Of a stretch of 64,000 bases of DNA, positions 181 through 18,747 are shown one piece after another. Origin of the DNA: Scyliorhinus canicula (Eukaryota). The notes under the pieces are model-generated. The model was not told the DNA's origin and ran no database searches. It saw only the letters and a list, made by a program, of their open reading frames with translations. Location: contig NC_052156.1 of NCBI RefSeq assembly GCF_902713615.1, forward strand, positions 72,941,631 through 73,005,630, given 5' to 3'. Within the stretch, counting starts at the first letter, position 1, and every line of letters starts with the position of its first letter. The position numbers were made by a program, and so were the translations under genes.

Positions 181-584
181 ATTATTTCTATTTGTTATCC
201 CATTGATGAACAAGGTGTGAGGGCTGTTGGTATTTTCTTCATATTGTCAAAGCATTAGCGTTAGTGTAGATTCAGCTGAGATACAGTTCCAGACATGATC
301 TAACGGAATGGCAGAACATTAGAACAGATGAAGGCCATTCAGCCCTTCGAGCCTGTACTGCCATTCATTTAGATCACAGTACGTATTCTCCATCCACCCG
401 CCTTTGCTCACTGACCCATAATGCCCATTTCGAAAAAATTGACCAATCTCAGTTTTGACAACTTCAACTGTCCAAGGCCAATATATCCTTCTTGCAATGC
501 GGTGAATAGAATTGACCAGACTGGAGAGCTGAATGGCATACCTATTCATAGGTTCCTATAATTTTCAATCTTCAACTGCCTTAA

Positions 585-895
585 TACAGCATATTTCTCC
601 AAAACATCTTTCATATTTTCAGGATGTCCTGAAACATTTCATTGCAAAGGCAACTTCCACAGCAAAGCTCTTCAAACAGCAATGATGGGTTAATCTTTTT
701 GGTAGTATTTGTCAGGGGATGACTCTTGGCCAGGACATCAGATCTCCCTACAGTTCAAAAAATCCCATACATCCATCTGAAGAGGCAGATGGGGGCCTCA
801 GTTTAACATTTCATCTAAATGGTTCACCTAACAATGCAACATTCCCTCAGTACTGCACTGGGCTGCCAGTTTATTGAATATGCTCAAGTATCTAC
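585..895 (-). mobile_element. Degenerate Deu-domain SINE (SacSINE1-like)
   Basis: Similar to copies at 40755-41140 and 46900-47190 (shared ctcagtactgcactgg and ggccaggaca blocks). Family name is from recall. Confidence 0.5.
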
Positions 896-1112
896 AAGAA
901 TTTAGCAGTTCTGGGTTTGAAGTATTTTGTTGTTCAGTATTTTGCTCAGTTTTACTTCATCAATTATTTTGAAGTTGGTGAATGGTCCAGCCTGTGCAAA
1001 AGGCAAGATAATGTTTTTGGAGGAATGTAATGGCTAGCCCCGAAATGAAACCCTGACCGTCCTCTTTAGACTCCAAGCCATCTGCTGAGTTTCAGAATTT
1101 TCTGTTTTAGAG

Positions 1113-1258
1113 ACTGACTGGAAACCGGAGCACCTGGAGGAAAACCACGCAGACATGGGAAGAACGTGCAGACTCCATACAGTGATCCAAGCCAGGAATC
1201 AAACCTGGGACCCTGGCGCTGTGAAGCAACAGTGCTAACCACTGTGCTACCGTGCCGT
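1113..1258 (-). mobile_element. HE1/V-SINE fragment
   Basis: tRNA-like head (ggcacggtagcacagtggttagcactg...gggtttgattcc) followed by the ggtgctccggtttcc block. Confidence 0.8.
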
Positions 1259-1649
1259 CCAGAAGATTACAGGTTCAATTCCTTGTTTGACCCAAGTTAA
1301 CTAATTTTACCCAGGACACAGCAGTTAGGTTACCACAGTTGCCCTTACCACAAGGCTAGACAGAGAAAGAAAAACAAATGGGTATCCTGTTCCTTATTGT
1401 TATCTGATGGCTCCTGCCATCGAGAGCATCTGTGTGTGTTAAGAAAGAAAGGGAGTGAGAGAATGACAGACACAGAAATTAAAAGGTAATAGGCAGAAAT
1501 CAAACTCAACGGATAAGCTTTCCATGGTCCAATAATCTGCCGATATTATACAGGCTCCAGCAGATAAAAAAAGGTAGTTGCCACAGGTCAAGACAGAGGA
1601 CATTTTTGAAGCTGTTATGTTTTCATAGACCAATCCTATTTTCCAAACT

Positions 1650-1812
1650 TTTTCTTTTTTTTTTATAAAGTTAGAATACCCAATTATTTTTCTCCAATTA
1701 AGGGGTGATTTAGCGTGGCCAATCCACCTAACCTACACATCTTTGGGTTATGGGGATGAAACCCACGCAGACATGGGGAGAATGTGCAAACTCCACACGG
1801 ACAGTGACCCGG
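1650..1812 (-). mobile_element. 5'-truncated HE1-type SINE, poly(A)-tailed subtype, with TSD
   Basis: 14-bp TSD ctattttccaaact at 1636-1649 and 1813-1826. A-rich tail on the minus strand. Confidence 0.85.
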
Positions 1813-1989
1813 CTATTTTCCAAACTGATAAGCAGCTAAAATTTGAAAGATCATCAGAGGCCATCAAGTGAATACGGCAGTAACTGAAACAGCAGAATCC
1901 CTGCCTGCAAACCTTTCCCAGCACTAGCCCTCAGTCTGGTCAGTCAAACACAGAAGAATGATCACATGCTTACCATTTGCTCTAGCATC

Positions 1990-2507
1990 AGAAGTAGGCT
2001 TACATTAACACTGCAATGAAGTTACTGTGAAAATGAAATGAAAATGAAATTAAATGAAAATGAAATGAATGAAAATTGCTTATTGTCACAAGTGGGCTTC
2101 AAATGAAGTTACTGTGAAAAGCCTCTAGTCTCTGGCGCCTGTTCGGGAGGCTGGTACGGGAATTGAACCGTGCTGCTGGCCTGCTTTCAAAGCCAGCGAT
2201 TTAGCCCTGTGCTAAACAGCCCCTATAATGAAATGAAAATCGCTTATTGTCACAAGTAGGCTTCAAATGAAGTTACTGTGAAAAGCCCCTAGTCGCCACA
2301 CTGTAGCTCCTGTTCGGGTACACGGAGGGAGAATTCAGAATGCCAAATTCACCTAACAAGCATGTCTTTCGGGACTTATGGGAGGAAACCCACGCAGACA
2401 CGGGGAGAATGTGCAGAATCCTCCCAGACAGTGACCCAAGCCGGGAATCGAACCCAGGTCCCTGGCGCTGTGGAGCGACAGTGCTAACCACTGTGCTACC
2501 GTGCCAC
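1990..2507 (-). mobile_element. Stacked SINEs with (ATTTTC)n-type tails
   Basis: Three copies of the tail block gaagttactgtgaaaa (about 2020, 2105, 2270) and two different tRNA-like heads (about 2225 and 2505). Confidence 0.75.
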
Positions 2508-2509
2508 CT

Positions 2510-2850
2510 TGAGGGATCTAGATCCTATAAATGCTACATATGAGAAAGATCCACAGTCTATCAACACAGCACCTGTGCAAGTGATCCAGATCTCATCAAA
2601 GTTACACATGCAAGATATCCATTAATGTCACAGGCATGAGAGAAATCCAGATCCATCAGAGCTACATATGTGAGAAATACAGATCCTATGCTTTATGTAT
2701 GAGATTTCCAGATTCACTTAATACTACGTGTGTGAAAGCTCTGGTTCTCTTGAACACTACACACTTGTGAGAGATCCAGTACTACAGAAGAAGAGATCTC
2801 GGTCCGATCAGTGGAGCCTGTGCATGTGAGATTTGATCCAGATGCGTTAA
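2510..2850. repeat. Highly degenerate tandem repeat, unit about 32-37 bp
   Basis: Recurring gagagatccagatc...ctacacatgt motif, about 9-10 eroded copies. Confidence 0.5.
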
Positions 2851-5269
2851 TCTGGTGCCATCTTCCAATAAAAGTGACAGAGATTTAATCCATTTGAGAC
2901 AAACCAGATTATTGAAATACCTAATTTACCTCACTGACAAAGCTTTAACTTTCAAAATGTAATTATTGGCATCAGAAAAAATTCAAAAGGACAGAAAAAA
3001 TCAGAGTCACTGGTCTGAAATAGCCATCAAATTCACTATCACCCAGACTGTAACCGTGAAGAGCTTTGGAGAGGCCCAGAAGAACATGCAGATGAGGGGA
3101 AGAAATAAAGGCACGTGAAGGAGGTGGGGAAGAGTTGCATGCGCGGGAGAAAGGAATAATGTTTATTTTAAAATTAAGATTTTTTTTTAAAAACAAAGTT
3201 TCATTAAACATCTTGAATGATTAAAACGTTCAAAAGTGAAATCTTCTAAACTTTCCCAGCACATTGGGAGGAGAACGGAAGGAAGCCAAGTGTTTTTTTA
3301 AATAAGGATTGACTGCAGAGAGCGCCGTCAATCCCTCACACTGGAATCAGCCAAGAAGCTTCCCATGCCGACTGCCTGTGTTCAGCCAGCTCACAGACTA
3401 CACTTCCGGCTTCATGAAACAACTCAGCATTAGATCACCACATTCCAAGGCGGGGGAGGGGGTTGGGTAGTCCACGTGGAACACCCTCCTGTTGCCTGAC
3501 GCCCTTTACTCTGCATACTGTGTAACAAACCTGTTAATCATGGTTAGTCCTGCTTCTCATATTGAACTGGAATTGAATGGGGCTATGGTCACGACAGAAG
3601 AATCTTTAGAAACAGGAAAAAGATCATTCAGTCTGACTAAACCTGAAGCTTTCTGATGGATCCAGTCCACCTGCTCACCACCCCGATGACCGCTCCCTAG
3701 TCAATTATTATAGGGGCAGTACTGTGCCTTAGTGAAAGGCTAACAAACATCAAATGAGGAAATATCTAACACCACAGGACTTTACAAAGGATTCGCCAAA
3801 CTAAAATGACATTGCCGTCTGAGAGAAAGCATGCGAGCATGGAGGGAGCCACCATTTGCTGTAGTCCTGCAAAGTCTGTCCCTTCTCAACACCCATCACC
3901 ATTTGGCTTGGCACAAGCTTTCTTTCCCCGTACCGTACTTCTGACACGTTACTACATCTCTATCTACTTTTCCTTTCTCCTTGGCAACACCACATTGCCA
4001 GAGGTTGTAACCACCAATTGGTTTTCTCCATTATATGGTCTGATTTAATGACTCAGCGTTATAACATTCTCTCAGTCCTCCGGTACCTGGTGTGTTACTA
4101 GACCAGGAGGATGAGAATATCCTAAGTTTAATCCCTGCCCTGTGTTGAGCCAGCACATCTCACGGGTTGAAGCCCCACCATTGTCCGCAACCTTAGTGGC
4201 CCTGGTTTTCCAAGGGTTAAGTAAAATAAATTCACAAGGCTTCCAGCTTCGGGGTGGCATTCTCCCATCTGGGGGCTAAGTCCTGTGGCGGGGCGGGACC
4301 ATGGAATGTTCCCCATGTGGAGACAGGGGGAATACCATGCTGGATCTCCTGGCCCTGACCTCATCCAGTTATACACCCTGGGAGGGTTTGTGCCATACTC
4401 TGTGATGGTGAGGGGTGGGAATGATAGTGCGGGTCCCACCCTTATATCTGGGCGCCATATTGAAAAGGTGCCCAACATCACAAACCCATCGTTGAAGAAA
4501 CGAGATGGACCTCTTCATGTCCTGGCTTTGCTTGTTTTCCCGCTGGGCGTCATGGAGAATCGGCAGTGGGAGGAAGATTCTGGTCGGTTCTTCATCTGTA
4601 TCCCATTAGTGGGATGCAAATCAGCTCCACGCTGGCCTCCAGCGGGTTTCCTGGCACCAGCCAGTTGAACTGCTGGTGGGGCCATGAGAGAATTCTGCCG
4701 TTGGTTCTTTCCACAGGAAAATAGGAGTATGAGCGCCAGGGCAAAAACATGTCTTAGTTTAGCTGTGTGACAAAGCCACTCCAGACTAATTTACCCACCA
4801 AATCACCCAAAACAAAGATCTTTTCCTTCGAACTGTCATTGTTTTTAACTCTCTACCATTAGCTCTGTTTGTATCCCAGATCCGTGCCTTTTCACTCGGT
4901 TTCTTTCTTAAACCCTTTGCCATTCAGTCCCTTTCTGTCTCGAATCCTCTGTCCTCCCCGGATATCAAACACTTTGAGACATTTTATGAGGTTAAGGATG
5001 CTGTACAAATGCAAGGTGTTGGTATGTGTTGAGGATAGTATTCTTCTTGGCTGTGATATCCTGTGTAGTTGACTGCCCCTTAATCATTTTAACTCAGCTT
5101 CACAGAGTTAATAGTCTCACTATTCCTTTTCGCGTGCATCTCCAATTCGCCCCCAGCGCTCCCAGTCCCCAGTCCTCCAGTGCCCCCAGACCCCAAACCG
5201 CCCCCAGTGCCCTGTCCAAACCCCACCCACCAGCACTGCCACTAGGCCCCCAGCACACTCACTCCTCAA

Positions 5270-6605
5270 CTCGCCCCCAGCACATCCACTCCCCAACACC
5301 CCGCCAGCGCACCCACTCCCCAACACCCCCCCAACGCACCCACTCCCCCACTCGTAAACCCCCCCAGCACACCCACTCCCCAACACCCCCCCCAGCACAC
5401 CCACTGCCCAACTCCACCCCCCCCCCACCCCCAGCACACCCACTCCCCAATGCGCACCCACTCCTCCCCAAGGTGCACCCACTCCCCAACTCCCTCCTCC
5501 CCCCACAGGGCACACCCACTCCCCAACTCTCTCCCCCCCCCTCCAGCACACCCACTCCCCCCCAGCGCACCCACTCCCCAACTCCCCCCCCAGCACACCC
5601 ACTCCCCAACTCCCCCCCAGCACACCCACTCCCCAACTCCCCCCCCATAAGGCACACCCACTCCCCAACCAGCACACCCATTCCCCAACCAGCACACCCA
5701 TTCCCCAACTCTCCCCCCCAGCACACCCATTCCCCAACTCCCCCCCCCCCCCAAGGCGCACCCACTCCTCAACCAGCACACCCATTCCCCAACTCTCCCC
5801 CCCAGCAAACCCATTCCCCAACTCTCCCCCCCCCAGCAAACCCATTCCCCAACTCTCCCCCCGCCAGCAAACCCATTCCCCAACTCTTCCCCCCCAGCGC
5901 ACCCACTCCCCAACTCCCCCCCAGCACACCCACTCCCCAACTCCCCCCCCCCCAAGGCGCACCCACTCTCCAACTCCCCCCTCCCCCCCAGCGCACCCAC
6001 TCCCCAACTCCCCCCCCCCCCAGCGCACCCACTCCCCAACTCTCCCCCCCAGCGCACCCATTCCCCAACTCCCCCCCAGCACACCCACTCCCCAACTCTC
6101 CCCCAGCGCACCCATTCCCCAACTCCCCCCAGCACACCCACTCCCCAACTCTCCCCCCCAGCGCACCCATTCCCCAACTCTTCCCCCCCCCCCAGCGCCC
6201 CCACTGCCCAACTCTCCCCCCCCCCAAGCACACCCACTCCCCAAGGCGCACCCACTCCCCCCAAGATGCACCCACTGCCCAACTCCCCCCCCCCCCTCCA
6301 GCACACGCACTCCCCAACACCCCGCAGCACACCCACTCCCCAACTCTCCCCCCCGCGCACCCATTCCCCAACTCCTCCCCCCCACTCCCCAACTCCTCCC
6401 CCAGCGCACCCACTCCCCAACTCCCCCCCCAGCACACCCACTCCCTAACATCCCCCCCCAGTGCACCCACTCCCCAACTCTTCCCCCCCACGCACCCACT
6501 CCCTAACTCCTCCCCCAGCGCACCCACTACCCAACTTCCCCCCCCAGCGCACCCACTCCCCAACTCCCCCCCCCCCCAGCGCACCCACTCCCCAACTCGC
6601 TCCCC
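5270..6605. repeat. C-rich minisatellite, unit about 28-32 bp (CCAGCRCACCCAYTCCCCAACT-Cn); G-quadruplex-prone on the minus strand
   Basis: Directly visible tandem array with variable C-runs. The minus-strand unit is GGGGGAGTTGGGGAGTGGGTGTGCTGGGG. Confidence 0.95.
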
Positions 6606-7024
6606 CATCACAACCACATCCAACTCGCCCGACATTTCCACTCCTTAACCTGCCCCCAACACCCCCATTCAGCAACTCGCCCCCAACAACCCCCATTCAG
6701 CAACTCGCCCCCAACACCCCCACTCACTCCCAATCCATCCCCTACCCTTTCCCACTCCCTTTTTCACCCTCCTTTTACTCCTCTCTTCAACTCTCTCCAG
6801 CCCCTTCGCATCACTTCACTCCCTCACCAGCTACTCCTCACCCCAACTCTCTTCACCCCATCCCCTCAACACCCCGCATTCCTCTCTCCTCACCCTCTTC
6901 TCCAACTCATCTCCTCACCCCAGCCCCTCTTTCTTCCTCATCCCTCCAGAGCTCTCCTTCCACACTCCTCATCCCTCTTCCTTCCTCACCCCCTACCCTG
7001 TTCCCTCAGCTCACAGTAACTCAC

Positions 7025-7138
7025 CTTGTACTTCCTGGGTTTCTTGATGAAGGAGGTCCTGGCAGTGAAGAACTGTTCAAATTCGGAGTCTTCCTCCTGA
7101 CTGCAGTAACCACTGCTGCTAGTGCTGGTCCACGTCAT
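7025..7138 (-). CDS. RASSF1: RASSF1 exon 2-gamma (RASSF1C-type N-terminal exon), 114 nt, phase 0/0
   Basis: Minus strand reads polypyrimidine tract-ttccag|ATG...AAG|GTGAGT. The only open frame encodes MTWTSTSSSGYCSQEEDSEFEQFFTARTSFIKKPRKYK, which closely matches the human RASSF1C N-terminus as recalled (MTWSSTTSSGYCSQEDSDSELEQYFTARTSLARRPRRDQ). RASSF3 and RASSF5C have similar but less close N-termini. Confidence 0.93.
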
Positions 7139-7690
7139 CTGGAACAACGAGGAGAGGAGGAAGGGAAAGGACAAAAAGTGGGAAAAAAGATAGCGATAAC
7201 CCACTAAGTGGCGGAAACCTGGCCTCAACTGGCTGTTAAAGCTCTTGTAGACAAAGCCCTGGCTTCTATGTGGATGAGAGAACTCTCTCTGTTACGGTCT
7301 CTCTGGGTTGCTCCTGTATTGTCTCAGCTCAGTACTGGGGGTTTCTCTCTCTCTCTCTCTCTGCCAGCCGTTGAAATTGGAAAGTACACACGCTGCAAAT
7401 CCCTAGAGCTGATTTGCTGGTGGGAAAAGGCTGGGAATGGGTGATCTAATCCGGTTCCGCCTCCTTCCTGCCTTTTATGTGCAATCCTACTGATTTCATC
7501 ATCCAACTATTCCAACTGCCAAATATAGCTGCTTTAACCCCTGCCATGCCAAACTGCTTTAAAAGGCACAAATCATACCTCTAACAGGCCTTGTGGAAAC
7601 AAAAGGGCTATGAATAGAATGCAGTGCAAGATCAATCAAAAAGCAGGGGGGGGAAAGGTGGGAAGACAGGATCAGAGGTTGGGGGAAGTG

Positions 7691-8900
7691 GAGAGGGTAC
7701 GGAAGGGGAGGGCGAGAAGAGAGGGTACGGAAGGGGAGGGCGAGAAGAGAGGGTACGGAAGGGGAGGGCGAGAAGAGAGGGTACGGAAGGGGAGGGCGAG
7801 AAGAGAGGGCACGGAAGGGGAGGGCGAGAAGAGAGGGCACGGAAGGGGAGGGCGAGGAGAGGGCACGGAAGGGGAGGGCGAGGAGAGGGCACGGAAGGGG
7901 AGGGCGAGGAGAGGGCACGGAAGGGGAGGGCGAGGAGAGGGCACGGAAGGGGAGGGCGAGGAGAGGGCACGGAAGGGGAGGGCGAGGAGAGGGCACGGAA
8001 GGGGAGGGCGAGGAGAGGGCACGGAAGGGGAGGGCGAGGAGAGGGCACGGAAGGGGAGGGCGAGGAGAGGGCACGGAAGGGGAGGGCGAGGAGAGGGCAC
8101 GGAAGGGGAGGGCGAGGAGAGGGCACGGAAGGGGAGGGCGAGGAGAGGGCACGGAAGGGGAGGGCGAGGAGAGGGCACGGAAGGGGAGGGCGAGGAGAGG
8201 GCACGGAAGGGGAGGGCGAGGAGAGGGCACGGAAGGGGAGGGCGAGGAGAGGGCACGGAAGGGGAGGGCGAGGAGAGGGCACGGAAGGGGAGGGCGAGGA
8301 GAGGGCACGGAAGGGGAGGGCGAGGAGAGGGCACGGAAGGGGAGGGCGAGGAGAGGGCACGGAAGGAGAGGACGAGGAGAGGGCACGGAAGGGCGAGGGC
8401 GAGGAGAGGGCACGGAAGGGGAGGGCGAGGAGAGGGCACGGAAGAGGAGGGCGAGGAGAATGAGGAGAGGGTACGGAAGGGGGTACGGAAGGGAGGAGAG
8501 GGTACGGAAGGGAGGAGAGGGTACGGAAGGGGAGGGCAAGGAGAGGGTACGGAAGGGGAAGGCAAGGAGAGGGTACGGAAGGGGAGGGCGAGGAGAGGGT
8601 ACGGAAGGGGAGGGCGAGGAGAGGGTACGGAAGGGGAGGGCGAGGAGAGGGTACGGAAGGGGAGGGCGAGGAGGGGGCACGGAAGGGGAGGGCGAGGAGA
8701 GGGCACGGAAGGGGAGGGCACGGAAGGGGAGGGCGAGGAGAGGGCACGGAAGGGGAGGGCGAGGAGAGGGCACGGAAGGGGAGGGCGAGGAGGGGGCACG
8801 GAAGGGGAGGGCGAGGAGGGGGTACGTAAGGAGAGGACGAGGAGAGGGTACGGAAGGGGAGGGCGAGGAGAGGGTACGGAAGGGGTGGGCGAGGAGAGGG
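7691..8900. repeat. 26-bp purine-rich minisatellite, left arm (GGGYACGGAAGGGGAGGGCGAGGAGA)n, about 46 units
   Basis: Near-perfect tandem array with two CpGs per unit. The first units are 28-bp variants. Confidence 0.97.
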
Positions 8901-10646
8901 TCTTTGGCAGGTAGGATCAAGGAAAACCCAAAAGCTTTCTATAGGTATGTCAGGAATAAAAGAATGACTAGGGTAAGTGTAGGGCCAGTCAAGGACAGTG
9001 GTGGGAAGTTGTGTGTGGAGGCTGAGGAGATAAGTGAGATACTAAATGAATACTTTTTGTCAGTATTCACTCAGGAAAAAGATAATGTTGTGGAGGAGAA
9101 TGCCGAGACCCAGGCTATTAGAATAGATGGCATTGAGGTGCGTAGGGAAGAAGTGTTGGCAATTCTGGACAAGGTGAAAATAGATAAGTCCCCGGGGCCT
9201 GATGGGATTTATCCTAGGATTCTCTGGGAAGCCAGGGAAGAGATTGCTGAGCCTTTGGCTTTGATTTTTATGTCATCATTGGCTACAGGAATAGTGTCAG
9301 AGGACTGGTGGATAGCAAATGTGGTCCCTTTGTTCAAGAACGGGAGTAGAGATAACCCCGGTAACTATAGGCCGGTGAGCCTCACGTCTGTTGTGGGTAA
9401 AGTCTTGGAGAGGATTATAAGAGATACGATTTATAATGATCTAGATAGGAATAATATGATTAGGGATAGTCAGCATGGTTTTGTGAAGGGTAGGTCATGC
9501 CTCACAAACCTTATCGAGTTCTTTGAGAAGGTGACTGAACAGGTAGACGAGGGTAGAGCAGTTGATGTGGTGTATATGGATTTCAGTAAAGCGTTTGATA
9601 AGGTTCCCCACGGTCGTCTATTGCAGAAAATACGGAGGCTGGGGATTGAGGGTGATTTAGAGATGTGGATCAGAAATTGGCTAGTTGAAAGAAGACAGAG
9701 GGTGGTGGTTGATGGCAAATGTTCAGAATGGAATTCAGTTACGAGTGGCGTACCACAAGGATTTGTTCTTGGGCCGTTGCTGTTTGTCATTTTTATAAAT
9801 GACCTAGAGGAGGGCACAGAAGGTTGGGCGAGTAAATTTGCAGACGACACTAAAGTCGGTGGAGTTGTAGACAGTGTGGAAGGATGTTGCAGGTTACAGA
9901 GGGACATAGATAAGCTGCAGAGCTGGGCTGAGAGGTGGCAAATGGAGTTTAATGTAGAGAAGTGTGAGGTGATTCACTTTGGAAAGAATAACAGGAATGC
10001 AGAATATTTGGCTAATGGTAAAATTCTTAGCAGTGTGGACGAGCAGAGGGATCTCGGTGTCCATGTACATAGATCCCTGAAAGTTGCCACCCAGGTTGAT
10101 AGGGTTGTGAAGAAGGCCTATGGTGTGTTGGCCTTTATTGGTAGAGGGATTGAGTTCCGGAGCCATGAGGTCATGTTGCAGCTGTACAAAACTCTGATAC
10201 GGCCGCATTTGGAGTATTGCGTACAGTTCTGGTCGCCTCATTATAGGAAGGACGTGGAAGCTTTGGAACGGGTGCAGAGGAGATTTACCAGGATGTTGCC
10301 TGGTATGGAGGGAAAATCTTATGAGGAAAGGCTGATGGACTTGAGGTTGTTTTCGTTAGAGAGAAGAAGGTTAAGAGGTGACTTAATAGAGGCATACAAA
10401 ATGATCAGAGGGTTAGATAGGGTGGACAGTGAGAGCCTTCTCCCGCGGATGGAGGTGGCTAGCACGAGGGGACATAGCCTTAAATTGAGGGGTAATAGTT
10501 ATAGGACAGACGTCAGAGGTAGGTTTTTTACGCAAAGAGTGGTGAGGCCGTGGAATGCCCTACCTGCAACAGTAGTGAACTCGCCAACATTGAGGGCATT
10601 TAAAAGTTTATTGGATAAGCATATGGATGATAATGGCATAGTGTAG
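8460..10646 (+). CDS. Open 728-aa chimeric ORF: 147 aa from the minisatellite plus 581 aa of CR1 ORF2 RT; expression unknown
   Basis: True ATG at 8460 with A at -3, and no stop until 10646. Whether it is transcribed or translated cannot be seen in the sequence. Confidence 0.3.
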   Translation: MRRGYGRGYGREERVRKGGEGTEGEGKERVRKGKARRGYGRGGRGEGTEGEGEERVRKGRARRGYGRGGRGGGTEGEGEERARKGRARKGRARRGHGRGGRGEGTEGEGEEGARKGRARRGYVRRGRGEGTEGEGEERVRKGWARRGSLAGRIKENPKAFYRYVRNKRMTRVSVGPVKDSGGKLCVEAEEISEILNEYFLSVFTQEKDNVVEENAETQAIRIDGIEVRREEVLAILDKVKIDKSPGPDGIYPRILWEAREEIAEPLALIFMSSLATGIVSEDWWIANVVPLFKNGSRDNPGNYRPVSLTSVVGKVLERIIRDTIYNDLDRNNMIRDSQHGFVKGRSCLTNLIEFFEKVTEQVDEGRAVDVVYMDFSKAFDKVPHGRLLQKIRRLGIEGDLEMWIRNWLVERRQRVVVDGKCSEWNSVTSGVPQGFVLGPLLFVIFINDLEEGTEGWASKFADDTKVGGVVDSVEGCCRLQRDIDKLQSWAERWQMEFNVEKCEVIHFGKNNRNAEYLANGKILSSVDEQRDLGVHVHRSLKVATQVDRVVKKAYGVLAFIGRGIEFRSHEVMLQLYKTLIRPHLEYCVQFWSPHYRKDVEALERVQRRFTRMLPGMEGKSYEERLMDLRLFSLERRRLRGDLIEAYKMIRGLDRVDSESLLPRMEVASTRGHSLKLRGNSYRTDVRGRFFTQRVVRPWNALPATVVNSPTLRAFKSLLDKHMDDNGIV

Positions 10647-10742
10647 GTTAGATGGCCTTTAGTTTTTGACTTCCCATGCCGGTGCAACATCGTGGGCCGA
10701 AGGGCCTGTACTGCGCTGTATCGTTCTATGTTCTATGTTCTA
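8901..10742 (+). mobile_element. 5'-truncated CR1-clade LINE (RT domain and 3' end, no endonuclease) inserted in the minisatellite
   Basis: Motifs KSPGPDG, NYRPVSLTS, QHGF, YMDFSKAFD, GVPQGFVLGP, SKFADDTK and RPHLEYCVQFW. Stop at 10646. The 3' end terminates in (TTCTATG)n repeats. Confidence 0.96.
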
Positions 10743-11320
10743 AGGGGAGGGAGAGGAGAGGGTACGGAAGGGGAGGGCGAGGAGAGGGTACGGAAGGGGA
10801 GGGCGAGGAGAGGGTACGGAAGGGGAGGGCGAGGAGAGGGTACGGAAGGGGAGGGCGAGGAGAGGGTACGGAAGGGGAGGGCGAGGAGAGGGTACGGAAG
10901 GGGAGGGCGAGGAGAGGGTACGGAAGGGGAGGGCGAGGAGAGGGCACGGAAGGGGAGGACGAGGAGAGGGCACGGAAGGGGAGGGCGAGGAGAGGGCACG
11001 GAAGGAGAGGGCGAGGAGAGGGCACGGAAGGGGAGGGCTAGGAGAGGGTACGGAAGTGGAGGGCGAGGAGAGGTACGGAAGGGGAGGGCGAGGAGAGGGT
11101 ACGGAAGGGGAGGGCGAGGACAGGGTACGGAATGGGACGGCGAGGAGAGAGTACGGATGGGGAGGGCGAGGAGAGGGTACGGAAGGGGAGGGCGAGGTGA
11201 GGGTACGGAAGGGGAGGGCGAGGTGAGGGTACGGAAGGGGAGGGCGAGGTGAGGGTACGGAAGGGGAGGGCGAGGTGAGGGTACGGAAGGGGAGGGCAAG
11301 GAGAGGGTACGGAAGAGGAG
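10743..11320. repeat. 26-bp purine-rich minisatellite, right arm, about 22 units
   Basis: Same unit as 7691-8900. It resumes immediately after the CR1 tail. Confidence 0.95.
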
Positions 11321-13379
11321 GGATTTTGGCTACACCTCAATCCCCAGAAGTGAGACGAGAGGATTATATTAAAAAAAACTCAGCCAACAGACTTGATGTG
11401 TACCCACGATACAGAATGACATACACACTCTGCTCTGCCTTTCCAACCTTACGTGTACCCTCAAACTGAGCAGTTACGCTGCCGCATAAGTCACCAGAGA
11501 GGGGGAAAAGAAGAACGTTTTCATCCTAGCAACTGGTCCAAACTACCCATTCTTTTTCTTTCAGGGGAGGTGCACATGATGGGAGGATGTTGGAAGAAGC
11601 TGGTGCACGGTCAGGGGGAGTTCCAGTTTTGCTTTCTCATGGCTTGTTACCTTTTGAAAATTTTAGTATCATGGTGCTCAAAATCACATGGTGGGAGATG
11701 GTTTGGAGAAATCTAAAAGTACTTAATTGGCTGTGAAGCACTTAGGGATATCGTGAATGACACTACATAAATGGAAATTATTTCTTTTGTCCCTCACATA
11801 CGACCTCCAGAGCATTAAGCATAGCAAACACATCCTGGGAGTTTGTTATTACAGAAAGCTGGGCCTTCTCCATTACAACCTCCACTAGTCAAGATGCTCA
11901 GCCCTGCTGTAGTGTGAACTGGAATGGACTCAGATCATCTATACATGATTTTGTCTGCAAATCGCTGTGAAGTGCTGGAATGGGGGTGCATCAGGTCAGG
12001 AATCATAGGCAGATATACGATGAAACAAACCCTGCATTGACACAGGGCCCAGATCAATAGTGGGATCCTATGCCACGCCGGTGGACTGGGTATCTAATCT
12101 GAGTCTGATTTTGCGCTGTATTTGCTGGGGATAGAGCTATCAGCATCAAATGCAGAGTGAAATCAAACTCTGATTGGCGAGTCTGATTAACTGGTAACGA
12201 ACGGTTAACTTGAGGGGTGGGTGCACAAGGCCACGACGAGAGGGGAGGGAGAGGCTGCTGAGGTTTGTGATCAAACACAAGGAGCAGAGCAGGTGACAGA
12301 TTTCTGCCAGCCGCTGGCATTAGCGGGCCCAGGCTTGCAATGGTCGCGAGGCCCGACATCTGGAGCCCCAGGCTACCCGTTGGGAGATTCCCCCTCTGCA
12401 ATGGCGGCCTGGATACTGAAGACAGATTTTGTGTCCACTTGTGGGCAGGTAGTCCTGTTGGCCCCTAACACACCTCCAGTGAAATAGCCTAGGTGCAGGA
12501 TGGGGTTCCAGGCCATTCGGTAAATTTCTTATCCCATCCACTTCCGTGCTCCCTCCCATTGTGAAAATGAATTGAAAATCCTAACCCCAGGTTAAGTCTG
12601 CACGTCAAGAATTAAACTGAAAGCCGAACTGTTGGTGAGCAAATTTTTATAGGCCTACTTTACAGAAACTCAGAATAAAAAAGAGCCAGAGTTCAGTCAG
12701 TTCAAGGCCCCCAGCCCCGAGGGGTGTTAACTGGATATTTAAATGAAGAATGTGACTCCTGCTGGTTGCAAGAATCCACAAATATGGCAAAAACAGGAGG
12801 AAGGAATGATAACCCGCTTCAAGGCAACTCTCTTGTAACTGCCCACCCTGCCAAATCCCTCGGGAGTCAGAATGTATAAGTAACCAAGGAGGGAATGTTG
12901 ATTCAGTGAAGGCACTTTCTTTCCTCGCCAGTCCTGGGTTCTGTGGAGAGTTGCTGGCATCTCTGACAGACCATTAACCTGCCCCTCCCCCTGCGGTGCC
13001 ACGTCCCGCAGAGCACACTGTGCAATGCGAGAGAGTCCCAGACGCTGTATTCATTAACACAGATGAGGCTGCATGTGCCTCAGGCTGAGTGAGGAGATAG
13101 TATAACAGCCACCATTGTGCAGATGGTAGGTAGCTTGCTGCTCCCCTCCATCCCCAGGAGAAATGCCAACTAATTTGAGTCCCAGCTGTACACCAGCCGT
13201 TGTTTCCCTTTACTTCTACCCTGAGTCACCCCCTGCCTCTTGCTGCTACAGCTTATTTAAAGCGACAGTCCCTCTATGAGACAGACTGACCTAACTTTTC
13301 CCATCAGTATTTTAAAGCACTGTTTTAAGATAGGGAACCCGATCTTGGTGATTTCATCCAAAGCAGGTTTAGCACAGGA

Positions 13380-13556
13380 GGGGCTGGTTTAGCACAGGGC
13401 TAATTAGCTGGCTTTTAAAGCAGACCAGGGCAGGCCAGCAGCACGGTTCAATTCCCGTACCAGCCTGCCCGAACAGGCGCCGGAATGTGGCGACTAGGGG
13501 CTATTCACAGTAATTTCATTTGAAGCCAACTTGTGACAATAAGCAATTTTCATTTC
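13380..13556 (+). mobile_element. Short SINE with (ATTTTC)-type tail
   Basis: Head gggctggtttagcacagggct...ggttcaattcccgtacc; tail cttgtgacaataagcaattttcatttc. Confidence 0.8.
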
Positions 13557-13904
13557 AAGCTTTCTTGCTGATGTTCTATGAAATCTGGTTCACCCATCAC
13601 CCCCCGTGCTAGCTGTCCTAGGTTGATCCCTGCCCAATAACAATATCACATTTCTCATCAGGGTTCTAATCCCTCCATGACTTTGCCTTTCCTTATTACT
13701 CCAGCCTTCCAAACCCTCCCCCTATCAGAGTGGCTTTGTATTGTTTCCTGTGACCACCATGAGAATGCTCTCCTTATGAGAATGCTCCCTTTCAAAGGTT
13801 CGCATTGGTTAGAGAGTGTATCAGGCATTCTTACTACAGTAGTGACTGTCTCACTATTGTGTGGATGCTTGGCACGCCAGCTCAGGTGAACATGGTATCA
13901 TAAT

Positions 13905-14350
13905 GAAAGCAGAAAGCACTGAAAATACTCAACCCGGTTTGGCAACATCTGTGGAGAGAGAAACAGAGTTAACATATCAAGTATGACTCTTCTTTTGAAC
14001 TAAAGAGAGTCATATTGGACTCGGAATGTTGGGCGGGATTCTCTGTCCCTTCGCTGGCGATGGAATTCTCTGCTCCCGCTGGCAGCACACCCCTGCCCGT
14101 GGATTTCCCAGTGAGGTGGCTTCAATGGGAAATCCCACTGACAAACTGCGGGAGTAGAGAATACCGCTGCCAGCGAACGGTGCACCAAATTCTCTGCCCT
14201 CACTAGCAATGGTAGTGGGGCGGGTGCGCAACGGAGAATCCCGGCTGTCAACTCTGTTTCGCTCTCCACAGGTGCTGTCGGACCTGCTGGCTATTTCCAT
14301 AATTTTCTGCTTTTATTTCAGATCTCCAGCACTGCAGTATTTTGCTTTTA
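13905..14350. mobile_element. Penelope-type inverted-repeat remnant interrupted by a MITE
   Basis: Arm gcaacatctgtggagagagaaacagagttaac is mirrored by gtcaactctgtttcgctctccacaggtgctg. Confidence 0.55.
14031..14245. mobile_element. MITE, Harbinger-like TIR family
   Basis: TIRs GGGCGGGATTCTC...GAGAATCCCGGC. Confidence 0.75.
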
Positions 14351-15381
14351 TTTATAATATCATAACACTCCTGTAAAGTGCCTCAGGATGTTTTTACACA
14401 TTAAAGACTTGTATGTAAATGATGCTGTTAATTAATTGGCAAGGAACTCAATTGGACACACCAACATGACAGTGGTGATTCCTGTTATACTGTTGTGAAG
14501 AATGGGTCGGGCAACTAGGCATGGAGGTGCTTATTGGGCAATGCCTAGATGTGTTACCTGACTGAGCCCATGTTTAATATTAAACATCAAAATAAAAAAA
14601 CAAGGTGATGCACAGGGTGAACATCTTTGGATGCTTATTCTGAAACTAGCCCTGATTACAAAGTCACAAAATATTTACAGCACAACAGACCTTTTGATCC
14701 AACAGGTCCATTTCAGGTGTTTATTCTCATGAGCCTCCTCACACCCGGTTTCATCTCACCCTTATCTGCTTATCTAACTTCCCTTTAAACAGACCAATGC
14801 CATCTGCCTCAACTACTCCACATGTTCCACATTCTAAGCACCTTCCAGTAAAGAAGTTTATCTTGAATTGCTTAATTAATGACTAACTTACATGTATGGC
14901 CTCTAGTTGTGTCTTTGCCTGCAAGTGGAACTTTTTTCTAAACTTAATCTTTCTAATCTCTTCAGGTCTGATGGGTTAAGGATGCTATTTTTCCTTAGTC
15001 TGCCACTGTGAGAGTTTGATATGAAATGAGTTCGGCAGTCTCAAACCAGTTTCTGTCACATGGAGCCATAGCATAAAACAATTCATAATTTGGCAGCCTC
15101 AAGCTTTTCACGCGTTGAACATTGAATTTAGTTTAGCAGAGACGCCTCTTTCGGCACACACCTTGTTTATGTCAGGTGAATTCAACAAGAAAGACAAACT
15201 GACCTTCCTTGATGTGAAGTTGCCTGCATAACCCAGCCTGCCTGTGAACTACCATTGATGTCCATGTGGACTGCAATGCAGGAAGCACAGTTACAGAAGG
15301 AAGAACACGGAACCAATCCCACCATGCTTTTCCACCAAGCCCTGTTTTCATCAGAGACACTGGGTGGAAAACCCAACTAGA

Positions 15382-15670
15382 ACCTAGAATTCCTGCAGTG
15401 CAGGAAGAGGCCATTCGGTCCATCGAGTCTGCACTAACCCTCTGAAAGAGAACCCTACTTAGGCCCACTCCCCCGTTCTATCCCTGTAACCCCATAAAGC
15501 CACCTAACCTGCACATCTTTGGACTGTGGAAGGAAACCAGAACATCCGGAGTAAACCCACACAGACACGGGGAGAAAGTGCAAACGCCACAAAGAACGTC
15601 ACCCGAAGCTGGAATTGAACCCAGGTCCTGGTGCTGTGAGGCAGCAGTGCTAACCACTGTGCCACCATGC
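15382..15670 (-). mobile_element. HE1/V-SINE with CR1-type tail
   Basis: tRNA-like head, central domain, and tail gatggaccgaatggcctcttcctgcactgcagg. Confidence 0.85.
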
Positions 15671-15877
15671 CACTCCAGGAGGGGTTTGCTTCCTCAGATA
15701 CCAAGCAGGTTTGAGTTATTTATGCAAAGGGCTGTTGCTCCTTTGCCAGGGAGACACCAGTTGGACAACTGTAGTGAGAAATGGGAACGTCAGACTGTAT
15801 GTCCGACATTACAATAGTGACTACACTTCAAAAGATTTTCATTAGCTGTTAAGCACTTTGAGACATCCAGTTGTTGT

Positions 15878-16205
15878 GGACAGCATGGTAGCACAGTGGT
15901 TAGCACTGTGACTTCACAGCACCAGGGTCCCAGGTTGGATTCCTTGCTGGGTCACTGTCTGTGCGGAGTCTGCACGTTCTTCCCGTGCCTGCGTTGGTTT
16001 CCTCCGGGTGCTCCGGTTTCCTCCCACAGTCCAAAGACGTGCAGGTTAGGTGGATTGGACATGCTAAATTGCCCTTAGGTGTCCAAAAATGATAGGAGGG
16101 GTTATTGGGTTACGGGGATAGGGTGGAAGTGAGGGCTTAAAGTGGGTCACTGCCGACTCGATGGGCCGAATGGCCTCCTTCTGCACTATATGTTCTACAT
16201 ATGTT
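15878..16205 (+). mobile_element. Full-length HE1/V-SINE with CR1-type tail
   Basis: Head ggacagcatggtagcacagtggttagc; tail gatgggccgaatggcctccttctgcact...gttcta. Confidence 0.88.
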
Positions 16206-16264
16206 CCATCTATGTATAAATGCAAGTTCTTATTTTAAAAAATCTCCTGGTATAGCTTTGTGTC

Positions 16265-16483
16265 AATTTTTTATTTTTAAATACCCAATTCTTTTTTTCC
16301 CCCAATTAAGAGGCAATTTAGCGTGGCCAATCCACCCAGCCTGCACGTCTTTAGGTTGTGGGGGATGAGACCCACGCCGACACGGGGAGAACATGCAAAC
16401 TCCACACGGACAGTGGCCTGAGGATGGTACCGAACCCGGGTCCTCGGCGCCGTGAGACAGCAGTGCTAACCACTGCACCGCCC
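16265..16483 (-). mobile_element. HE1-type SINE, poly(A)-tailed subtype
   Basis: Ends aattgggtatttaaaaataaaaa on the minus strand. Confidence 0.85.
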
Positions 16484-18622
16484 ATCAAATTTGTTTTAAT
16501 AGCACTGGGATGTATTTGTATTAATATAAAGACAAGTTGCTGATGTTGTTATTGTCAGAGTTTGCAGCACCAACTGTTGAAATTACAAAATTAGGTACAA
16601 TATATCAACTAATTGTATTTTATGATTAGGACTCAGAAAGGGGATGGAGTTGGGCTAAATGTTAATTCTTCATCTGTTGTGCAAGGGGATTGCTAAAGGA
16701 CTGGCTTCTCAAAAGGGGATAAGTCCTGCAGCCCTGGGCCAACCATTCAGAAACAGTCACTTAATGAGTGGCATCTTCCAAGGCCAGCATTTCACTGCAG
16801 TGAAGTTTTCGGTTCAGTGCCAACAGCGACATAGGATAAGGCCACTCACCACAAACATAGGGACAATATGGGTAGGACAAGCGCTACTTGGTCATACAGT
16901 CGCAATGTGTTATGCACTGCGATGCAGACACTCGCCACCCCACTTAGAGTAATCTCCTGGGACAGATGAGAAATCAGGCCCTGGAGCAGTCAAGGACAGC
17001 AACCTAATGGGGCTCAAAAAGCATGCTGAGCCTGGGGTACCGAGTACACCAGTCTGTGTGATTTCAGTCTGACTGTGTTATATTACAAATGCTAATTTCC
17101 TAAGGTAGCCAACAGAGCAGGATTGCAAAACAATAACAAAATCCAGTCATTTCTCAGATTCTAGCTCTGTAAATTATGTGGCAGGAAGTCAAAAACCAAT
17201 CCATGCATATCTAAAAATAATAATAGTTCTTCATTTCCTTTCTCTTTATGTACTTACAGCAGTCTGACCGAAGCCTCAGCATGAGGTGCACTTCAACCAA
17301 AGGAAAGAAACATTTGTGGAATAAAAAGCAGATCACGGGAACTCCTGTTGCCGCACAGGAATAGTTGCTCATTCGGCACCCAATCCATCCACAGGTGCAT
17401 AAGTGGATTCTCCTGCCCGTGGCATATTGTTGTATGCCAATTGTCCACCTCTGCTCGGTGCCCCTCTCTCTAATCCTTGCTGCCTCTCCAGTCCTCGCCA
17501 CCCCTCTCTCAGGCCTTCTCCCTCTCCCAAACCCTCACCGCTTTTCTCATGAGCCCTCAGCCCCACCACGTCATCCGCAGAAGAGAGCTGGCGAAGGGGG
17601 GATGGGAGGTGGGTGAATGCTCTGGAGGTTTAGTGACAAAGACTCAGCAGGAATGCAAGGGCTTGGGAGGGGTGGAGAGGACTTGGGGAGGGTGGGCGAG
17701 GGCTCAGGAGGAGGTGGCGAGTGAGTGGCAAGGAGGGTGGGCAACGGGCACACAACAAAATCAGCAGTGGAAGAAACTTTGCATGTGTTGACGGACAAAG
17801 CAGGCAGGCACAAATGTTCCTTTGTGTCATCTGCAAATGCAGCCAAAGCAGAAACTCCAATATTAACACTGCATTCATGCTGCATCCATGCCTGGCGCCT
17901 TTCTAGCAGGCATGTGTTCAGCAGCGTGCGAGGTCCACTTTAAAGCAAAGATCTGACTCATTCAAATTCAAAGTTTGGGGTCTGATGACCTTATTAGAAC
18001 CTGCGGCTATATGCACGGGTTACACTCTGTGCACAGTTCATATTTATTTAACAGGGTAAGGGTTACTAGTTTAAGCTTCACTCACAATCGGTGCCCTATT
18101 AATTAGAATGGATTTTGGGATCTTAGTAAAGTGCACAGTCCTGAGGTTGTTGAAAGAACACGAGTGATTATCCTGTGCTGACAGCCTCATTGTTTGAAAT
18201 TGGGACCCTCGAGAAATGTTTGCCATTGTGCTGGTAATGGATCAGGACTGAGGGTTCTCCTATCCATTAGACGGAATGGATGAGATGGACTGACTGACCC
18301 TTCTCATTCCACGGGTCATTGTTTTGAGGTATTAAATGACAATCAGCTGCTGCACAGCCATGCTGCAATTAACATATTGAATCGTAACTCTACTGCCTTT
18401 GTGCCTCATATAATTTGCCTAGTGTCAGCTGTCTTACTGGAGCCATGATTTAGCCTGTGCTTCCACCTTTCTTCCCGCAACCCCCCCCCCCCCCCGCTGC
18501 ACCCCCCACTGCACCCCCTCCCCACCACAACCCCCCCCCCCCCCCACCCGCACACCCCCACCCGCACCACCTTTATCCACGCTCCAATCCACGGGTTACC
18601 AGACAGATTCACAGTCCCTTAC

Positions 18623-18747
18623 CACATTGGTGTCCTGTTCAAGTGCATTATCAGAGATGTCCACAAGGTTCGATATCTTGGTCTTTGGCCGGTTACAGTC
18701 TAACTGAATCAGGGGTCGGCAGCGATAGTGACACCGGAATCTACAGT
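18623..18747 (-). CDS. RASSF1: RASSF1 exon 2-alpha/beta (C-terminal half of the C1/DAG-binding zinc finger of RASSF1A), 125 nt, phase 1/0
   Basis: Not in the ORF track. Minus strand reads ctctttgctcctgtttcag|ACTGTAGA...AATGTG|gtaagg and translates to xCRFRCHYRCRPLIQLDCNRPKTKISNLVDISDNALEQDTNV. This matches human RASSF1A HCKFTCHYRCRALVCLDC...AVERDTNV as recalled. It lies upstream of exon 2-gamma on the same strand, as in the human gene. Confidence 0.93.

What the first reader, a model, noticed from the sequence alone, without database searches (positions are those of the whole stretch)
7025..18747. RASSF1C 'first' exon is built like an in-frame cassette exon: possible RASSF1A/C hybrid isoform
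Seen: the ATG of exon 2-gamma (7138) is preceded directly by a long polypyrimidine tract and CAG (tttcccttcctcctctcctcgttgttccag|ATG). The exon is 114 nt and phase 0/0, and exon 2-alpha/beta ends in phase 0 (AAT GTG|gtaagg). Established: in mammals 2-gamma is an alternative first exon with its own promoter, so C1-containing RASSF1A and RASSF1C are mutually exclusive. Inference: splicing 18623 to 7138 would give a protein with the C1 finger, then the RASSF1C SSGYCS/acidic motif, then the RA and SARAH domains. Alternatively, RASSF1C here may start from an upstream non-coding exon.
Basis: partly seen in the sequence, partly recalled or inferred. Interest (0 to 1): 0.7.

Follow-up and report, generated by a model that had tools for sequence, protein, structure and literature searches.

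The report
Shark RASSF1 exon used two ways
The exon that starts the short RASSF1C protein in this shark carries a strong, deeply conserved splice acceptor right before its ATG; related sharks and skates splice it in after the zinc-finger exon, but those combined isoforms are already in public annotation, so the finding is real and not new.

Summary
On the minus strand, exon 2-alpha/beta is 18747-18623 and ends in phase 0. Exon 2-gamma is 7138-7025, 114 nt, phase 0/0. Its ATG follows a pyrimidine tract and CAG that only 3 of 8538 AG sites in the window match in pyrimidine content.

The proposed C1 + 2-gamma hybrid exists in relatives. RefSeq models of 16 cartilaginous fishes carry the junction ...EQDTNV|MTWTSTSSSGYCS.... 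A 2405-nt RNA-seq contig from a skate maps to the skate gene as exons 1a-2ab-2g-3-4-5-6. The acceptor CCTCGTTGTTCCAG|ATG is identical in catshark, skate and sevengill shark, and nearly so in the elephant fish.

In this species I could show only first-exon use. Contigs of three RNA-like runs cross the AG without a break, up to 7454, and splice from 7025 to exon 3. The leader 7496-7139 has no ATG and lies below a conserved TATA-like promoter block.

Best reading: a hybrid first/internal exon. The hybrid junction itself was not tested in this genome, because too few raw reads covered it. The isoform is already annotated, though I found no paper that discusses it. No earlier scan note on other DNA covers it.

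The parts
18623..18747 (-). RASSF1 exon 2-alpha/beta. It encodes the C-terminal half of the C1 zinc finger plus a linker and ends in phase 0 (...EQDTNV).
   Evidence: Searches give the sequence and translation. In one search, tblastn of S. torazame isoform X1 residues 113-156 hits 18751-18620. In one search, Pfam C1_1 covers residues 82-132 of that model. In one search, all 9 sampled words of the exon are held by contigs of 19 runs (14 guessed to be RNA) of this organism.
18617..18622 (-). Donor site gtaagg of exon 2-alpha/beta.
   Evidence: The same GTG|gtaagg is present in skate and sevengill shark.
7139..7180 (-). 3' splice site: a pyrimidine tract of about 40 nt ending in ccag, directly before the ATG.
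   Evidence: Searches show its composition is in the top 3 of 8538 AG sites. In one search the last 14 nt are identical in the window, Leucoraja and Heptranchias; Callorhinchus differs by one substitution and one inserted T. One search shows this acceptor in use in a skate mRNA.
7025..7138 (-). Exon 2-gamma, 114 nt, phase 0/0. It encodes the MTW...SSGYCS...acidic...FFTARTSF segment.
   Evidence: In one search it is covered by contigs of 3 runs and by 6 raw RNA reads. In one search it is 94% identical in nucleotides to the skate exon, against 78% for exon 2-alpha/beta.
7019..7024 (-). Donor site gtgagt of exon 2-gamma, spliced to exon 3, which lies outside the window.
   Evidence: In one search all four runs show the same loose end at 7024. 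In one search that loose end reads DEYIDWKKQV, which is the start of exon 3 in the S. torazame model.
7139..7496 (-). 5' leader of the RASSF1C-type transcript, contiguous with exon 2-gamma. Transcription is shown up to 7454. It contains no ATG.
   Evidence: In one search the contigs span 7024-7454, 7024-7418 and 7024-7333 with no joint at 7139. In one search there are 0 ATG in 358 nt where 5.3 are expected (P about 0.005), and no GTRAG donor anywhere in 7139-7700.
7300..7560 (-). Conserved promoter and leader block, with TATA-like motifs at 7527-7521 (TATATTT) and 7479-7472 (CATAAAAG).
   Evidence: In one search it is 77.5% identical to Leucoraja over 267 nt. The match to Heptranchias is wider (window 7662-7196): 74% over 491 nt. 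The sub-stretch 7462-7349 is 72% identical to Callorhinchus. The motifs are read. The role as a promoter is inferred.

Best explanation
Exon 2-gamma of this shark's RASSF1 gene is a hybrid first/internal exon.

(1) From a conserved proximal promoter, with a start site inferred near 7455-7500, transcription runs straight through the acceptor sequence into the ATG at 7138. The transcript then splices from 7025 to exon 3. This gives a RASSF1C-type protein of about 261 aa. This use is shown in this species.

(2) In transcripts that start at the distant RASSF1A promoter, the spliceosome joins the exon 2-alpha/beta donor (18623) to the conserved pyrimidine-tract/CAG acceptor (7139). The 38 codons of 2-gamma are then inserted in frame between the C1 finger and the RA/SARAH part, giving a protein of about 416 aa. 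This use is shown in a skate mRNA and is modelled by RefSeq in 16 cartilaginous fishes. Here it is inferred.

Skipping the exon gives the mammal-like RASSF1A form, which is annotated in Heptranchias. In cartilaginous fish, therefore, the 'A-specific' and 'C-specific' N-terminal modules are not mutually exclusive.
For: Anatomy. Acceptor strength against the window background.

Three contig sets run unbroken across 7139 up to 7454. The exon 2-gamma to exon 3 junction appears in all four runs, which marks these as spliced RNA. The leader is free of ATG and of donor-like sites. A conserved block with TATA-like motifs lies upstream.

Internal use in relatives: the junction DTNV|MTWTS is present in RefSeq isoforms of Leucoraja, Amblyraja, Rhinoraja, Hypanus, Mobula, Pristis (no isoform label on this model), Narcine, Scyliorhinus torazame, Mustelus, Carcharodon, Rhincodon, two Chiloscyllium species, Hemiscyllium, Stegostoma and Heptranchias. 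All representatives tested have C1 + RA + SARAH.

Independent transcript evidence: Logan contig SRR5172150_6171 has a 417-aa ORF. It maps to the Leucoraja gene in seven blocks, 1a-2ab-2g-3-4-5-6, with ...CAATGTG|ATGACGTGG at the junction.

Conservation: the 14 nt before the ATG are identical in three elasmobranch lineages and near-identical in a holocephalan. The intron after the 2-gamma donor diverges at once. The conserved -3 C is a poor Kozak base, so translation context does not explain the conservation (my inference).

Cassette behaviour: Heptranchias X2 (426 aa) and X3 (388 aa) differ by exactly these 38 residues.
Against: No read or contig in this species was seen to use the AG at 7139-7140. 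The three contigs all take the contiguous path. The one raw-read run gave only 6 reads, with almost no depth (0.27) in the bin that holds the acceptor.

A search for short junction-spanning protein fragments found none. RefSeq Gnomon models are predictions, and I could not see their evidence records. Contigs cannot show transcription starts, so the start site is inferred. The relative abundance of the three forms is unknown.
Confidence: 0.85

Rival explanations
1. In this species exon 2-gamma is only a first exon. The pyrimidine tract and CAG are conserved for another reason, such as a 5'UTR or translation element, or a relic of coding sequence homologous to the bony-vertebrate ...TPSFE codons. 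The hybrid isoform is not made here.
For: In one search every contig runs unbroken through the AG and no joint is reported at 7139. The in-frame upstream residues SLFQ resemble PSFE, which is coding sequence in bony-vertebrate RASSF1C.
Against: The same acceptor is demonstrably spliced in a skate mRNA. It is modelled as spliced in a congener-like catshark (S. torazame X1) whose exon sequences are almost identical to the window. The -3 C is poor for translation initiation. Contigs drop minor paths, so cannot show absence.
Confidence: 0.08
2. The acceptor serves a non-coding leader exon of RASSF1C that lies further upstream.
For: The acceptor is strong, and an apparent CpG-rich kilobase lies at 8001-9000.
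Against: That CpG-rich stretch is a 26-nt minisatellite, not a promoter island. The contigs cross the AG unbroken for up to 316 nt. No GTRAG donor lies in 7139-7700. The conserved TATA-like block sits directly upstream of the contiguous leader. The Amblyraja X3 model also reads the leader without a break.
Confidence: 0.04
3. The hybrid isoforms in relatives are artefacts of gene prediction, which chained exons of two separate transcripts. No such mRNA exists anywhere.
For: Gnomon and ab initio predictors do sometimes chain alternative first exons. Sporadic hybrid models also appear in a turtle, a kangaroo rat and a fin whale, and some of these look poor in quality.
Against: An assembled RNA-seq contig independent of any gene predictor carries the whole hybrid ORF and splices correctly at all six introns. 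The models are consistent across 16 species from several annotation runs. The acceptor is conserved over the holocephalan-elasmobranch split.
Confidence: 0.03

Closest known systems
Mammalian RASSF1A and RASSF1C (human 3p21.3 locus)
   Same: The exon set is the same. Exons 1-alpha and 2-alpha/beta encode the C1 finger. Exon 2-gamma encodes the SSGYCS/acidic N-terminus and has its own promoter inside the intron. Shared exons 3-6 encode RA and SARAH (PMC2586335). TUSC2 lies next to the gene in Callorhinchus, as in human (the human synteny is from my own knowledge).
   Different: In human, seven transcripts (A-G) are described and none joins 2-alpha/beta to 2-gamma (PMC2586335). Bony-vertebrate 2-gamma starts further upstream (...TPSFE before MTW) and has GAG, not CAG, before the homologous ATG. 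Here and in other cartilaginous fishes the ATG is the first codon of the exon and is preceded by a strong acceptor that is used.
RefSeq predicted RASSF1 hybrid isoforms (X1; X2 in Heptranchias) of cartilaginous fishes (e.g. XP_072328255.1 Scyliorhinus torazame, XP_055503729.1 Leucoraja erinacea, XP_067855057.1 Heptranchias perlo)
   Same: The junction DTNV|MTWTSTSSSGYCS and the order C1, 2-gamma, RA, SARAH are identical. The 2-gamma peptide is identical to the window's.
   Different: None in kind. The window is simply another species' copy. These are automatic predictions, and I found no paper that comments on them.
Hybrid first/internal exons (Fiszbein and colleagues; PMC8769537, PMC11797052)
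   Same: One exon serves as the first exon from an intragenic promoter and as an internal exon through a strong 3' splice site. These papers describe evolutionary switching by gain or loss of a splice site or of promoter elements.
   Different: The inferred start site here lies about 315-360 nt upstream of the 3' splice site. In the human data set, start sites are typically centred on the splice site (PMC11797052 abstract). Internal use here changes the protein rather than only the UTR.
RASSF5 isoforms NORE1A and NORE1B/RAPL
   Same: The paralogue has the same two-promoter layout: a long C1-containing form and a short form with an SSGYCS-type N-terminus (PMC2586335; RASSF5-type hits).
   Different: I tested no hybrid form of RASSF5. 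The residues before the motif (TPS|MTSSNSM) give no AG at the homologous place (inference from protein only).

Membership tests
RASSF1 (classical RASSF: C1 - RA - SARAH) | C1 (phorbol-ester/DAG-type) zinc finger encoded by exons 1-alpha and 2-alpha/beta | tested here: met
   The window's exon 2-alpha/beta (18747-18623) aligns to residues 113-156 of the S. torazame model. Pfam C1_1 spans residues 82-132 of that model. Only the C-terminal half of the finger lies in the window. Exon 1-alpha is outside it.
RASSF1 (classical RASSF: C1 - RA - SARAH) | RA and SARAH domains encoded by exons 3-6 | not testable with these tools
   Exons 3-6 are not in the window. The RNA contigs of this species do splice 2-gamma to a sequence reading DEYIDWKKQV, which is the start of exon 3 in relatives. 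The relatives' full models carry RA and Nore1-SARAH.
RASSF1 (classical RASSF: C1 - RA - SARAH) | Exon 2-gamma peptide with the SSGYCS motif, an acidic run and FFTARTSF | tested here: met
   The 38-aa translation finds 77 relatives with E of 0.001 or less, led by RASSF1 of Amblyraja at 97% identity.
Hybrid first/internal exon | Used as a first exon: transcripts run unbroken from an upstream start into the exon | tested here: met
   In one search, contigs of three runs span 7024 to 7454, 7418 or 7333 without a joint, and nothing is covered upstream of 7486. The leader has no ATG. A conserved TATA-like block lies upstream.
Hybrid first/internal exon | Used as an internal exon through its 3' splice site | tested here: inconclusive
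   No junction read was seen in this species, but the bin holding the acceptor had almost no raw-read depth (0.27), and contigs drop minor paths. The feature is met in relatives: a skate mRNA contig and RefSeq models of 16 species.
Frame-preserving cassette exon | Length a multiple of 3, no stop codon, and both inclusion and skipping forms exist | tested here: met
   The exon is 114 nt and open. Heptranchias X2 (426 aa, included) and X3 (388 aa, skipped) differ by exactly the 38 residues. A skipping form in this species was not tested.
Frame-preserving cassette exon | Splice sites conserved beyond the neutral background | tested here: met
   The 14 nt before the exon are identical in three elasmobranchs and near-identical in Callorhinchus. 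Sequence further upstream, and the intron after the donor hexamer, do not align well.

The most novel reading that the evidence does not exclude
The ancestral jawed-vertebrate RASSF1 was one protein with the C1 finger, the SSGYCS segment, RA and SARAH, in which 2-gamma was an internal exon. The intragenic promoter arose beside that exon. Bony vertebrates later weakened the acceptor (CAG to GAG, with the pyrimidine tract turned into ...TPSFE codons behind a new upstream ATG). That change produced the strictly exclusive, functionally opposed A and C isoforms known from mammals.

The opposite direction, in which the cartilaginous-fish stem lineage gained a 3' splice site in a first exon, fits the present data equally well.
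Probability: 0.35. Interest if true: 0.55.

Novelty: already known. Interest (0 to 1): 0.33.

Why it matters
Work on mammalian RASSF1 treats the tumour-suppressive A form (C1 finger) and the growth-promoting C form (2-gamma N-terminus) as mutually exclusive products with opposite effects, for example on beta-catenin turnover through SCF-betaTrCP (PMC2586335). Cartilaginous fishes make, and have conserved the means to make, one protein that carries both N-terminal modules. This offers a natural test of whether the two modules antagonise each other within one molecule. It also gives a dated example, older than the elasmobranch-holocephalan split, of an exon kept as both first and internal exon. 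Because the isoform already sits in RefSeq for many species, the value lies in interpretation and evolution, not in discovery.

Tried and rejected
1. A CpG-rich kilobase at 8001-9000 looked like a RASSF1C CpG-island promoter with a possible leader exon. It is a 26-nt minisatellite at 7690-8900, with a second array of the same unit at 10742-11322. Rejected.

2. I searched the window for the other exons. ORF listing of 1-5300 and tblastn with the S. torazame model found only exons 2-alpha/beta and 2-gamma. Exons 1-alpha and 3-6 are outside the window.

3. Raw reads of run X20 gave only 6 reads, all in the 3' part of the exon. They say nothing about the acceptor, and read laying allows one call only.

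4. The third homology search used an 88-aa junction-spanning piece of the S. torazame model to catch short RNA-derived fragments of this species. It returned only four bony-vertebrate RASSF1C-type first-exon fragments. Nothing spanned the junction.

5. No DNA could be fetched for the Amblyraja X3, S. torazame or Chiloscyllium loci.

6. I tested whether RASSF3 keeps the same acceptor. Many RASSF3-type fragments read ...(F/S/L/P)Q|MTW upstream of the ATG. In the two loci fetched, however, the Q codon is CAA, so there is no AG. This gives no support for an acceptor older than the RASSF1/RASSF3 split. The organisms of these contigs are unnamed.

7. The Amblyraja isoform X3, with an 80-aa N-terminal extension, suggested a longer ORF. 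In this window the homologous leader has stops in both the extension frame and the upstream-ATG frame. There is no such extension here.

8. Literature searches found no paper on RASSF1 isoforms in cartilaginous fishes and none on a 2ab-2g hybrid.

9. No strict yUnAy branch-point motif lies within 65 nt of the acceptor. I make no claim about the branch point.
Full report
**1. What is in the sequence**

The gene lies on the minus strand. Exon 2-alpha/beta begins after ...ctgtttcag at 18747 and ends AAT GTG at 18623, followed by gtaagg. It has 125 nt and translates (after two bases that complete a codon) to CRFRCHYRCRPLIQLDCNRPKTKISNLVDISDNALEQDTNV, so it ends in phase 0.

Exon 2-gamma begins with ATG at 7138 and ends TAC AAG at 7025, followed by gtgagt. 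It has 114 nt and encodes MTWTSTSSSGYCSQEEDSEFEQFFTARTSFIKKPRKYK. Directly before the ATG lies ...cactttttgtcctttcccttcctcctctcctcgttgttccag.

Neither exon 1-alpha nor exons 3-6 are in the window.

**2. Is the acceptor more than chance?**

The AG at 7140-7139 has 18 of 20 and 36 of 40 pyrimidines upstream, a C at -3, and no other AG for 65 nt. Of 8538 AG dinucleotides on both strands of the window, three reach these values. Of the 155 AG|ATG sites, this is the only one. No strict branch-point consensus was found.

Exons 2-alpha/beta and 2-gamma both join exon 3, so they must end in the same phase. An acceptor placed exactly at the ATG therefore keeps the frame.

**3. The surroundings**

Exon 2-gamma sits in about 960 bp of unique DNA between two minisatellites, 5247-6726 and 7690-8900. 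A kilobase with CpG observed/expected of 1.09 is the second of these arrays, not a CpG island.

**4. Transcripts of this species**

Fourteen small runs guessed to be RNA, all of one organism, hold 30-38% of the words of 6727-7689. I laid three of these contig sets and one raw-read RNA run on that stretch.

- The contigs cover 7024-7454, 7024-7418 and 7024-7333 without any joint at 7139.
- Nothing is covered above 7486 or below 7024.
- All four runs show the same loose end at 7024.
- Its reverse complement reads DEYIDWKKQV, identical to the start of exon 3 in the S. torazame model.

These are therefore spliced mRNAs in which 2-gamma is the first exon, with a contiguous leader of at least 316 nt. 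The raw-read run gave 6 reads, all on the + strand, which fits RNA from the minus strand in a stranded library. The bin holding the acceptor had almost no depth (0.27).

Further features of the leader:
- The stretch 7496-7139 contains no ATG, where 5.3 are expected (P about 0.005).
- No GTRAG donor lies in 7139-7700.
- The stretch 7560-7300 is 77.5% identical to skate. A wider stretch, 7662-7196, is 74% identical to sevengill shark, and 7462-7349 is 72% identical to elephant fish.
- That block includes TATA-like motifs at 7527-7521 and 7479-7472 (read).

I infer a conserved proximal promoter with starts near 7455-7500. Contigs cannot show starts, so this step is inference.

**5. The hybrid isoform in relatives**

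An exhaustive HMMER search with the 38-aa peptide returned 77 proteins. Most carry the motif near their N-terminus.

The best hit is Amblyraja radiata RASSF1 isoform X3. It carries the motif at residues 81-118 because the model reads the contiguous leader in frame from an upstream ATG. In this window that frame is closed.

A word-indexed search scored on the 2-gamma region then found proteins that have both Pfam C1 and the 2-gamma peptide. Their sequences read ...ALEQDTNV|MTWTSTSSSGYCSQEE...KYK|DEY.... Cluster listings and a script showed this junction in RefSeq models of the following:
- Skates and rays: Leucoraja erinacea, Amblyraja radiata, Rhinoraja longicauda, Hypanus sabinus, Mobula hypostoma, Pristis pectinata (no isoform label on this model) and Narcine bancroftii.
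- Sharks: Scyliorhinus torazame, Mustelus asterias, Carcharodon carcharias, Rhincodon typus, Chiloscyllium punctatum, C. plagiosum, Hemiscyllium ocellatum, Stegostoma tigrinum and Heptranchias perlo.

In the 29 residues before the junction shown, the S. torazame model differs from the window by one residue. It is identical to the window in 2-gamma, so the window is from a very close relative.

Heptranchias also has the skipped form (X3, 388 aa, against X2 at 426 aa). It has a third form (X1, 438 aa) that uses an acceptor 36 nt further upstream and adds SEPPRFPSSLFQ. Pfam places C1 at 82-132, RA at 278-363 and SARAH at 371-410 of the S. torazame model. The insert at 156-193 therefore lies in the linker and breaks no domain.

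**6. Evidence independent of gene prediction**

One member of the Rhinoraja cluster is a protein from a Logan assembly of run SRR5172150. Its 2405-nt contig carries the 417-aa ORF.

The contig maps to the Leucoraja genome locus in seven blocks at 98.4-100% identity:
- 845-1343
- 33891-34015
- 40416-40534
- 48098-48204
- 49678-49982
- 52636-52756
- 54475-55615

This is exons 1a-2ab-2g-3-4-5-6, with ...CAATGTG|ATGACGTGG at the junction in question. The hybrid mRNA is therefore real in a skate. In that sample it was abundant enough to be the path the assembler followed.

**7. Conservation of the acceptor**

The 14 nt before the ATG (CCTCGTTGTTCCAG) are identical in the window, Leucoraja and Heptranchias. 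Callorhinchus has CTGGTTGTTTCCAG. Further upstream the tracts stay pyrimidine-rich but do not align.

Downstream of the 2-gamma donor, only the GTRAG consensus is shared. Callorhinchus has exon 2-alpha/beta 3.7 kb upstream of 2-gamma, ending EQDTNV.

The conserved C at -3 is unfavourable for translation initiation, by established knowledge of the Kozak context. Splicing is therefore the more likely constraint. This step is my inference.

Between catshark and skate, exon 2-gamma is 94% identical in nucleotides, against 78% for exon 2-alpha/beta.

**8. Mechanism**

The best reading is a hybrid first/internal exon, a known class (PMC8769537, PMC11797052). Three products follow:
- Transcripts from the proximal promoter read through the acceptor and give the short RASSF1C-type protein.
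- Transcripts from the distant A promoter splice 18623 to 7138 and give C1 + 2-gamma + RA + SARAH.
- Skipping the exon gives the mammal-like A form.

Shown here: first-exon use, the 2-gamma to exon 3 splice, and expression of exon 2-alpha/beta. For the last point, contigs of 19 runs of this organism (14 guessed to be RNA) hold all 9 sampled words of the exon. Shown in relatives: the hybrid junction. Inferred: the hybrid junction in this species, the start site, and the proportions of the three forms.

**9. Comparison with what is known**

In human, RASSF1A starts with 1-alpha and 2-alpha/beta. RASSF1C starts from a second CpG-island promoter with the single exon 2-gamma. Seven transcripts, A to G, are described and none joins the two (PMC2586335).

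In bony vertebrates the exon begins further upstream (...TPSFE before MTW). The residues homologous to the shark's in-frame SLFQ are coding there.

Three scattered tetrapod models also carry the hybrid junction at the homologous ATG: Eretmochelys, Dipodomys merriami X1 and Balaenoptera physalus. I did not assess their support. The Dipodomys model has an aberrant C-terminus and the Balaenoptera model is a partial record.

RASSF3-type loci have CAA, not CAG, before the ATG in the two cases fetched. The direction of evolution therefore stays open.

**10. Novelty and verdict**

The isoform is already present in public annotation for many cartilaginous fishes. I found no paper that discusses it, and the underlying mechanism is a known kind.

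The residual interest is evolutionary and functional: the A and C N-terminal modules are not exclusive outside bony vertebrates.

The N run at 47959-48106 was left untouched.

Noticed in passing
window 5247-6726, 7690-8900 and 10742-11322: Exon 2-gamma is boxed in by minisatellites. One is a C-rich array of 27-29-nt units at 5247-6726. The other is a 26-nt unit (GGAGAGGGCACGGAAGGGGAGGGCGA) in two arrays, which flank the CR1 element reported in another note. The second array mimics a CpG island (observed/expected 1.09).
   Followed up: partly
window 7204 and 7334-7372: Contigs of runs X1 and X13 carry a TG insertion behind 7204 relative to the window, and run X2 does not. This is probably an indel polymorphism in the 5' leader. 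A (GA)n run at 7334-7372 breaks some assemblies.
   Followed up: no
L003:55039-55074 (Heptranchias perlo): Heptranchias isoform X1 uses an alternative acceptor (aaag|) 36 nt upstream of the conserved one. This adds SEPPRFPSSLFQ in frame. The added residues resemble the ...TPSFE coding extension of bony-vertebrate RASSF1C.
   Followed up: partly
P0001 (Amblyraja radiata XP_032892660.1) against window 7502-7139: The 80-aa N-terminal extension of Amblyraja isoform X3 is the 5' leader read in frame from an upstream ATG. In this window the homologous frames contain stops (TAG soon after the upstream ATGs at 7502 and 7499, and TAA near 7296). The extension is not conserved and is probably not a real coding feature.
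   Followed up: partly
P0087, P0089, P0090 (Eretmochelys imbricata, Dipodomys merriami X1, Balaenoptera physalus): Sporadic tetrapod gene models also join ...DTNV to MTWSSTTSSGYCS. They use the AG of the GAG codon before the internal Met of 2-gamma. This may be low-level cryptic splicing or a prediction artefact.
   Followed up: no
L004:23721-27771 (Callorhinchus milii): TUSC2 lies about 5 kb downstream of RASSF1 in the elephant fish. To my knowledge this is the same neighbourhood as human 3p21.3.
   Followed up: no
L005:1126-1215 and L006:3028-3117 (unnamed RASSF3-like contigs): RASSF3-type first coding exons (MTWNSTMSSGYSS...) are preceded by pyrimidine-rich sequence ending CAA|ATG. This resembles the shark RASSF1 acceptor but lacks the AG.
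   Followed up: partly
window 7300-7560: A non-coding block of about 260 bp is conserved from catshark to skate and sevengill shark (74-78%) and in part to elephant fish. Its invariant sub-motifs include GCTATATTT, GATGAAATCAGT, CAGCAAATCAGCTC and TTTCCAATTTCAACGGC. It is a candidate core promoter or 5'UTR element of RASSF1C.
   Followed up: partly
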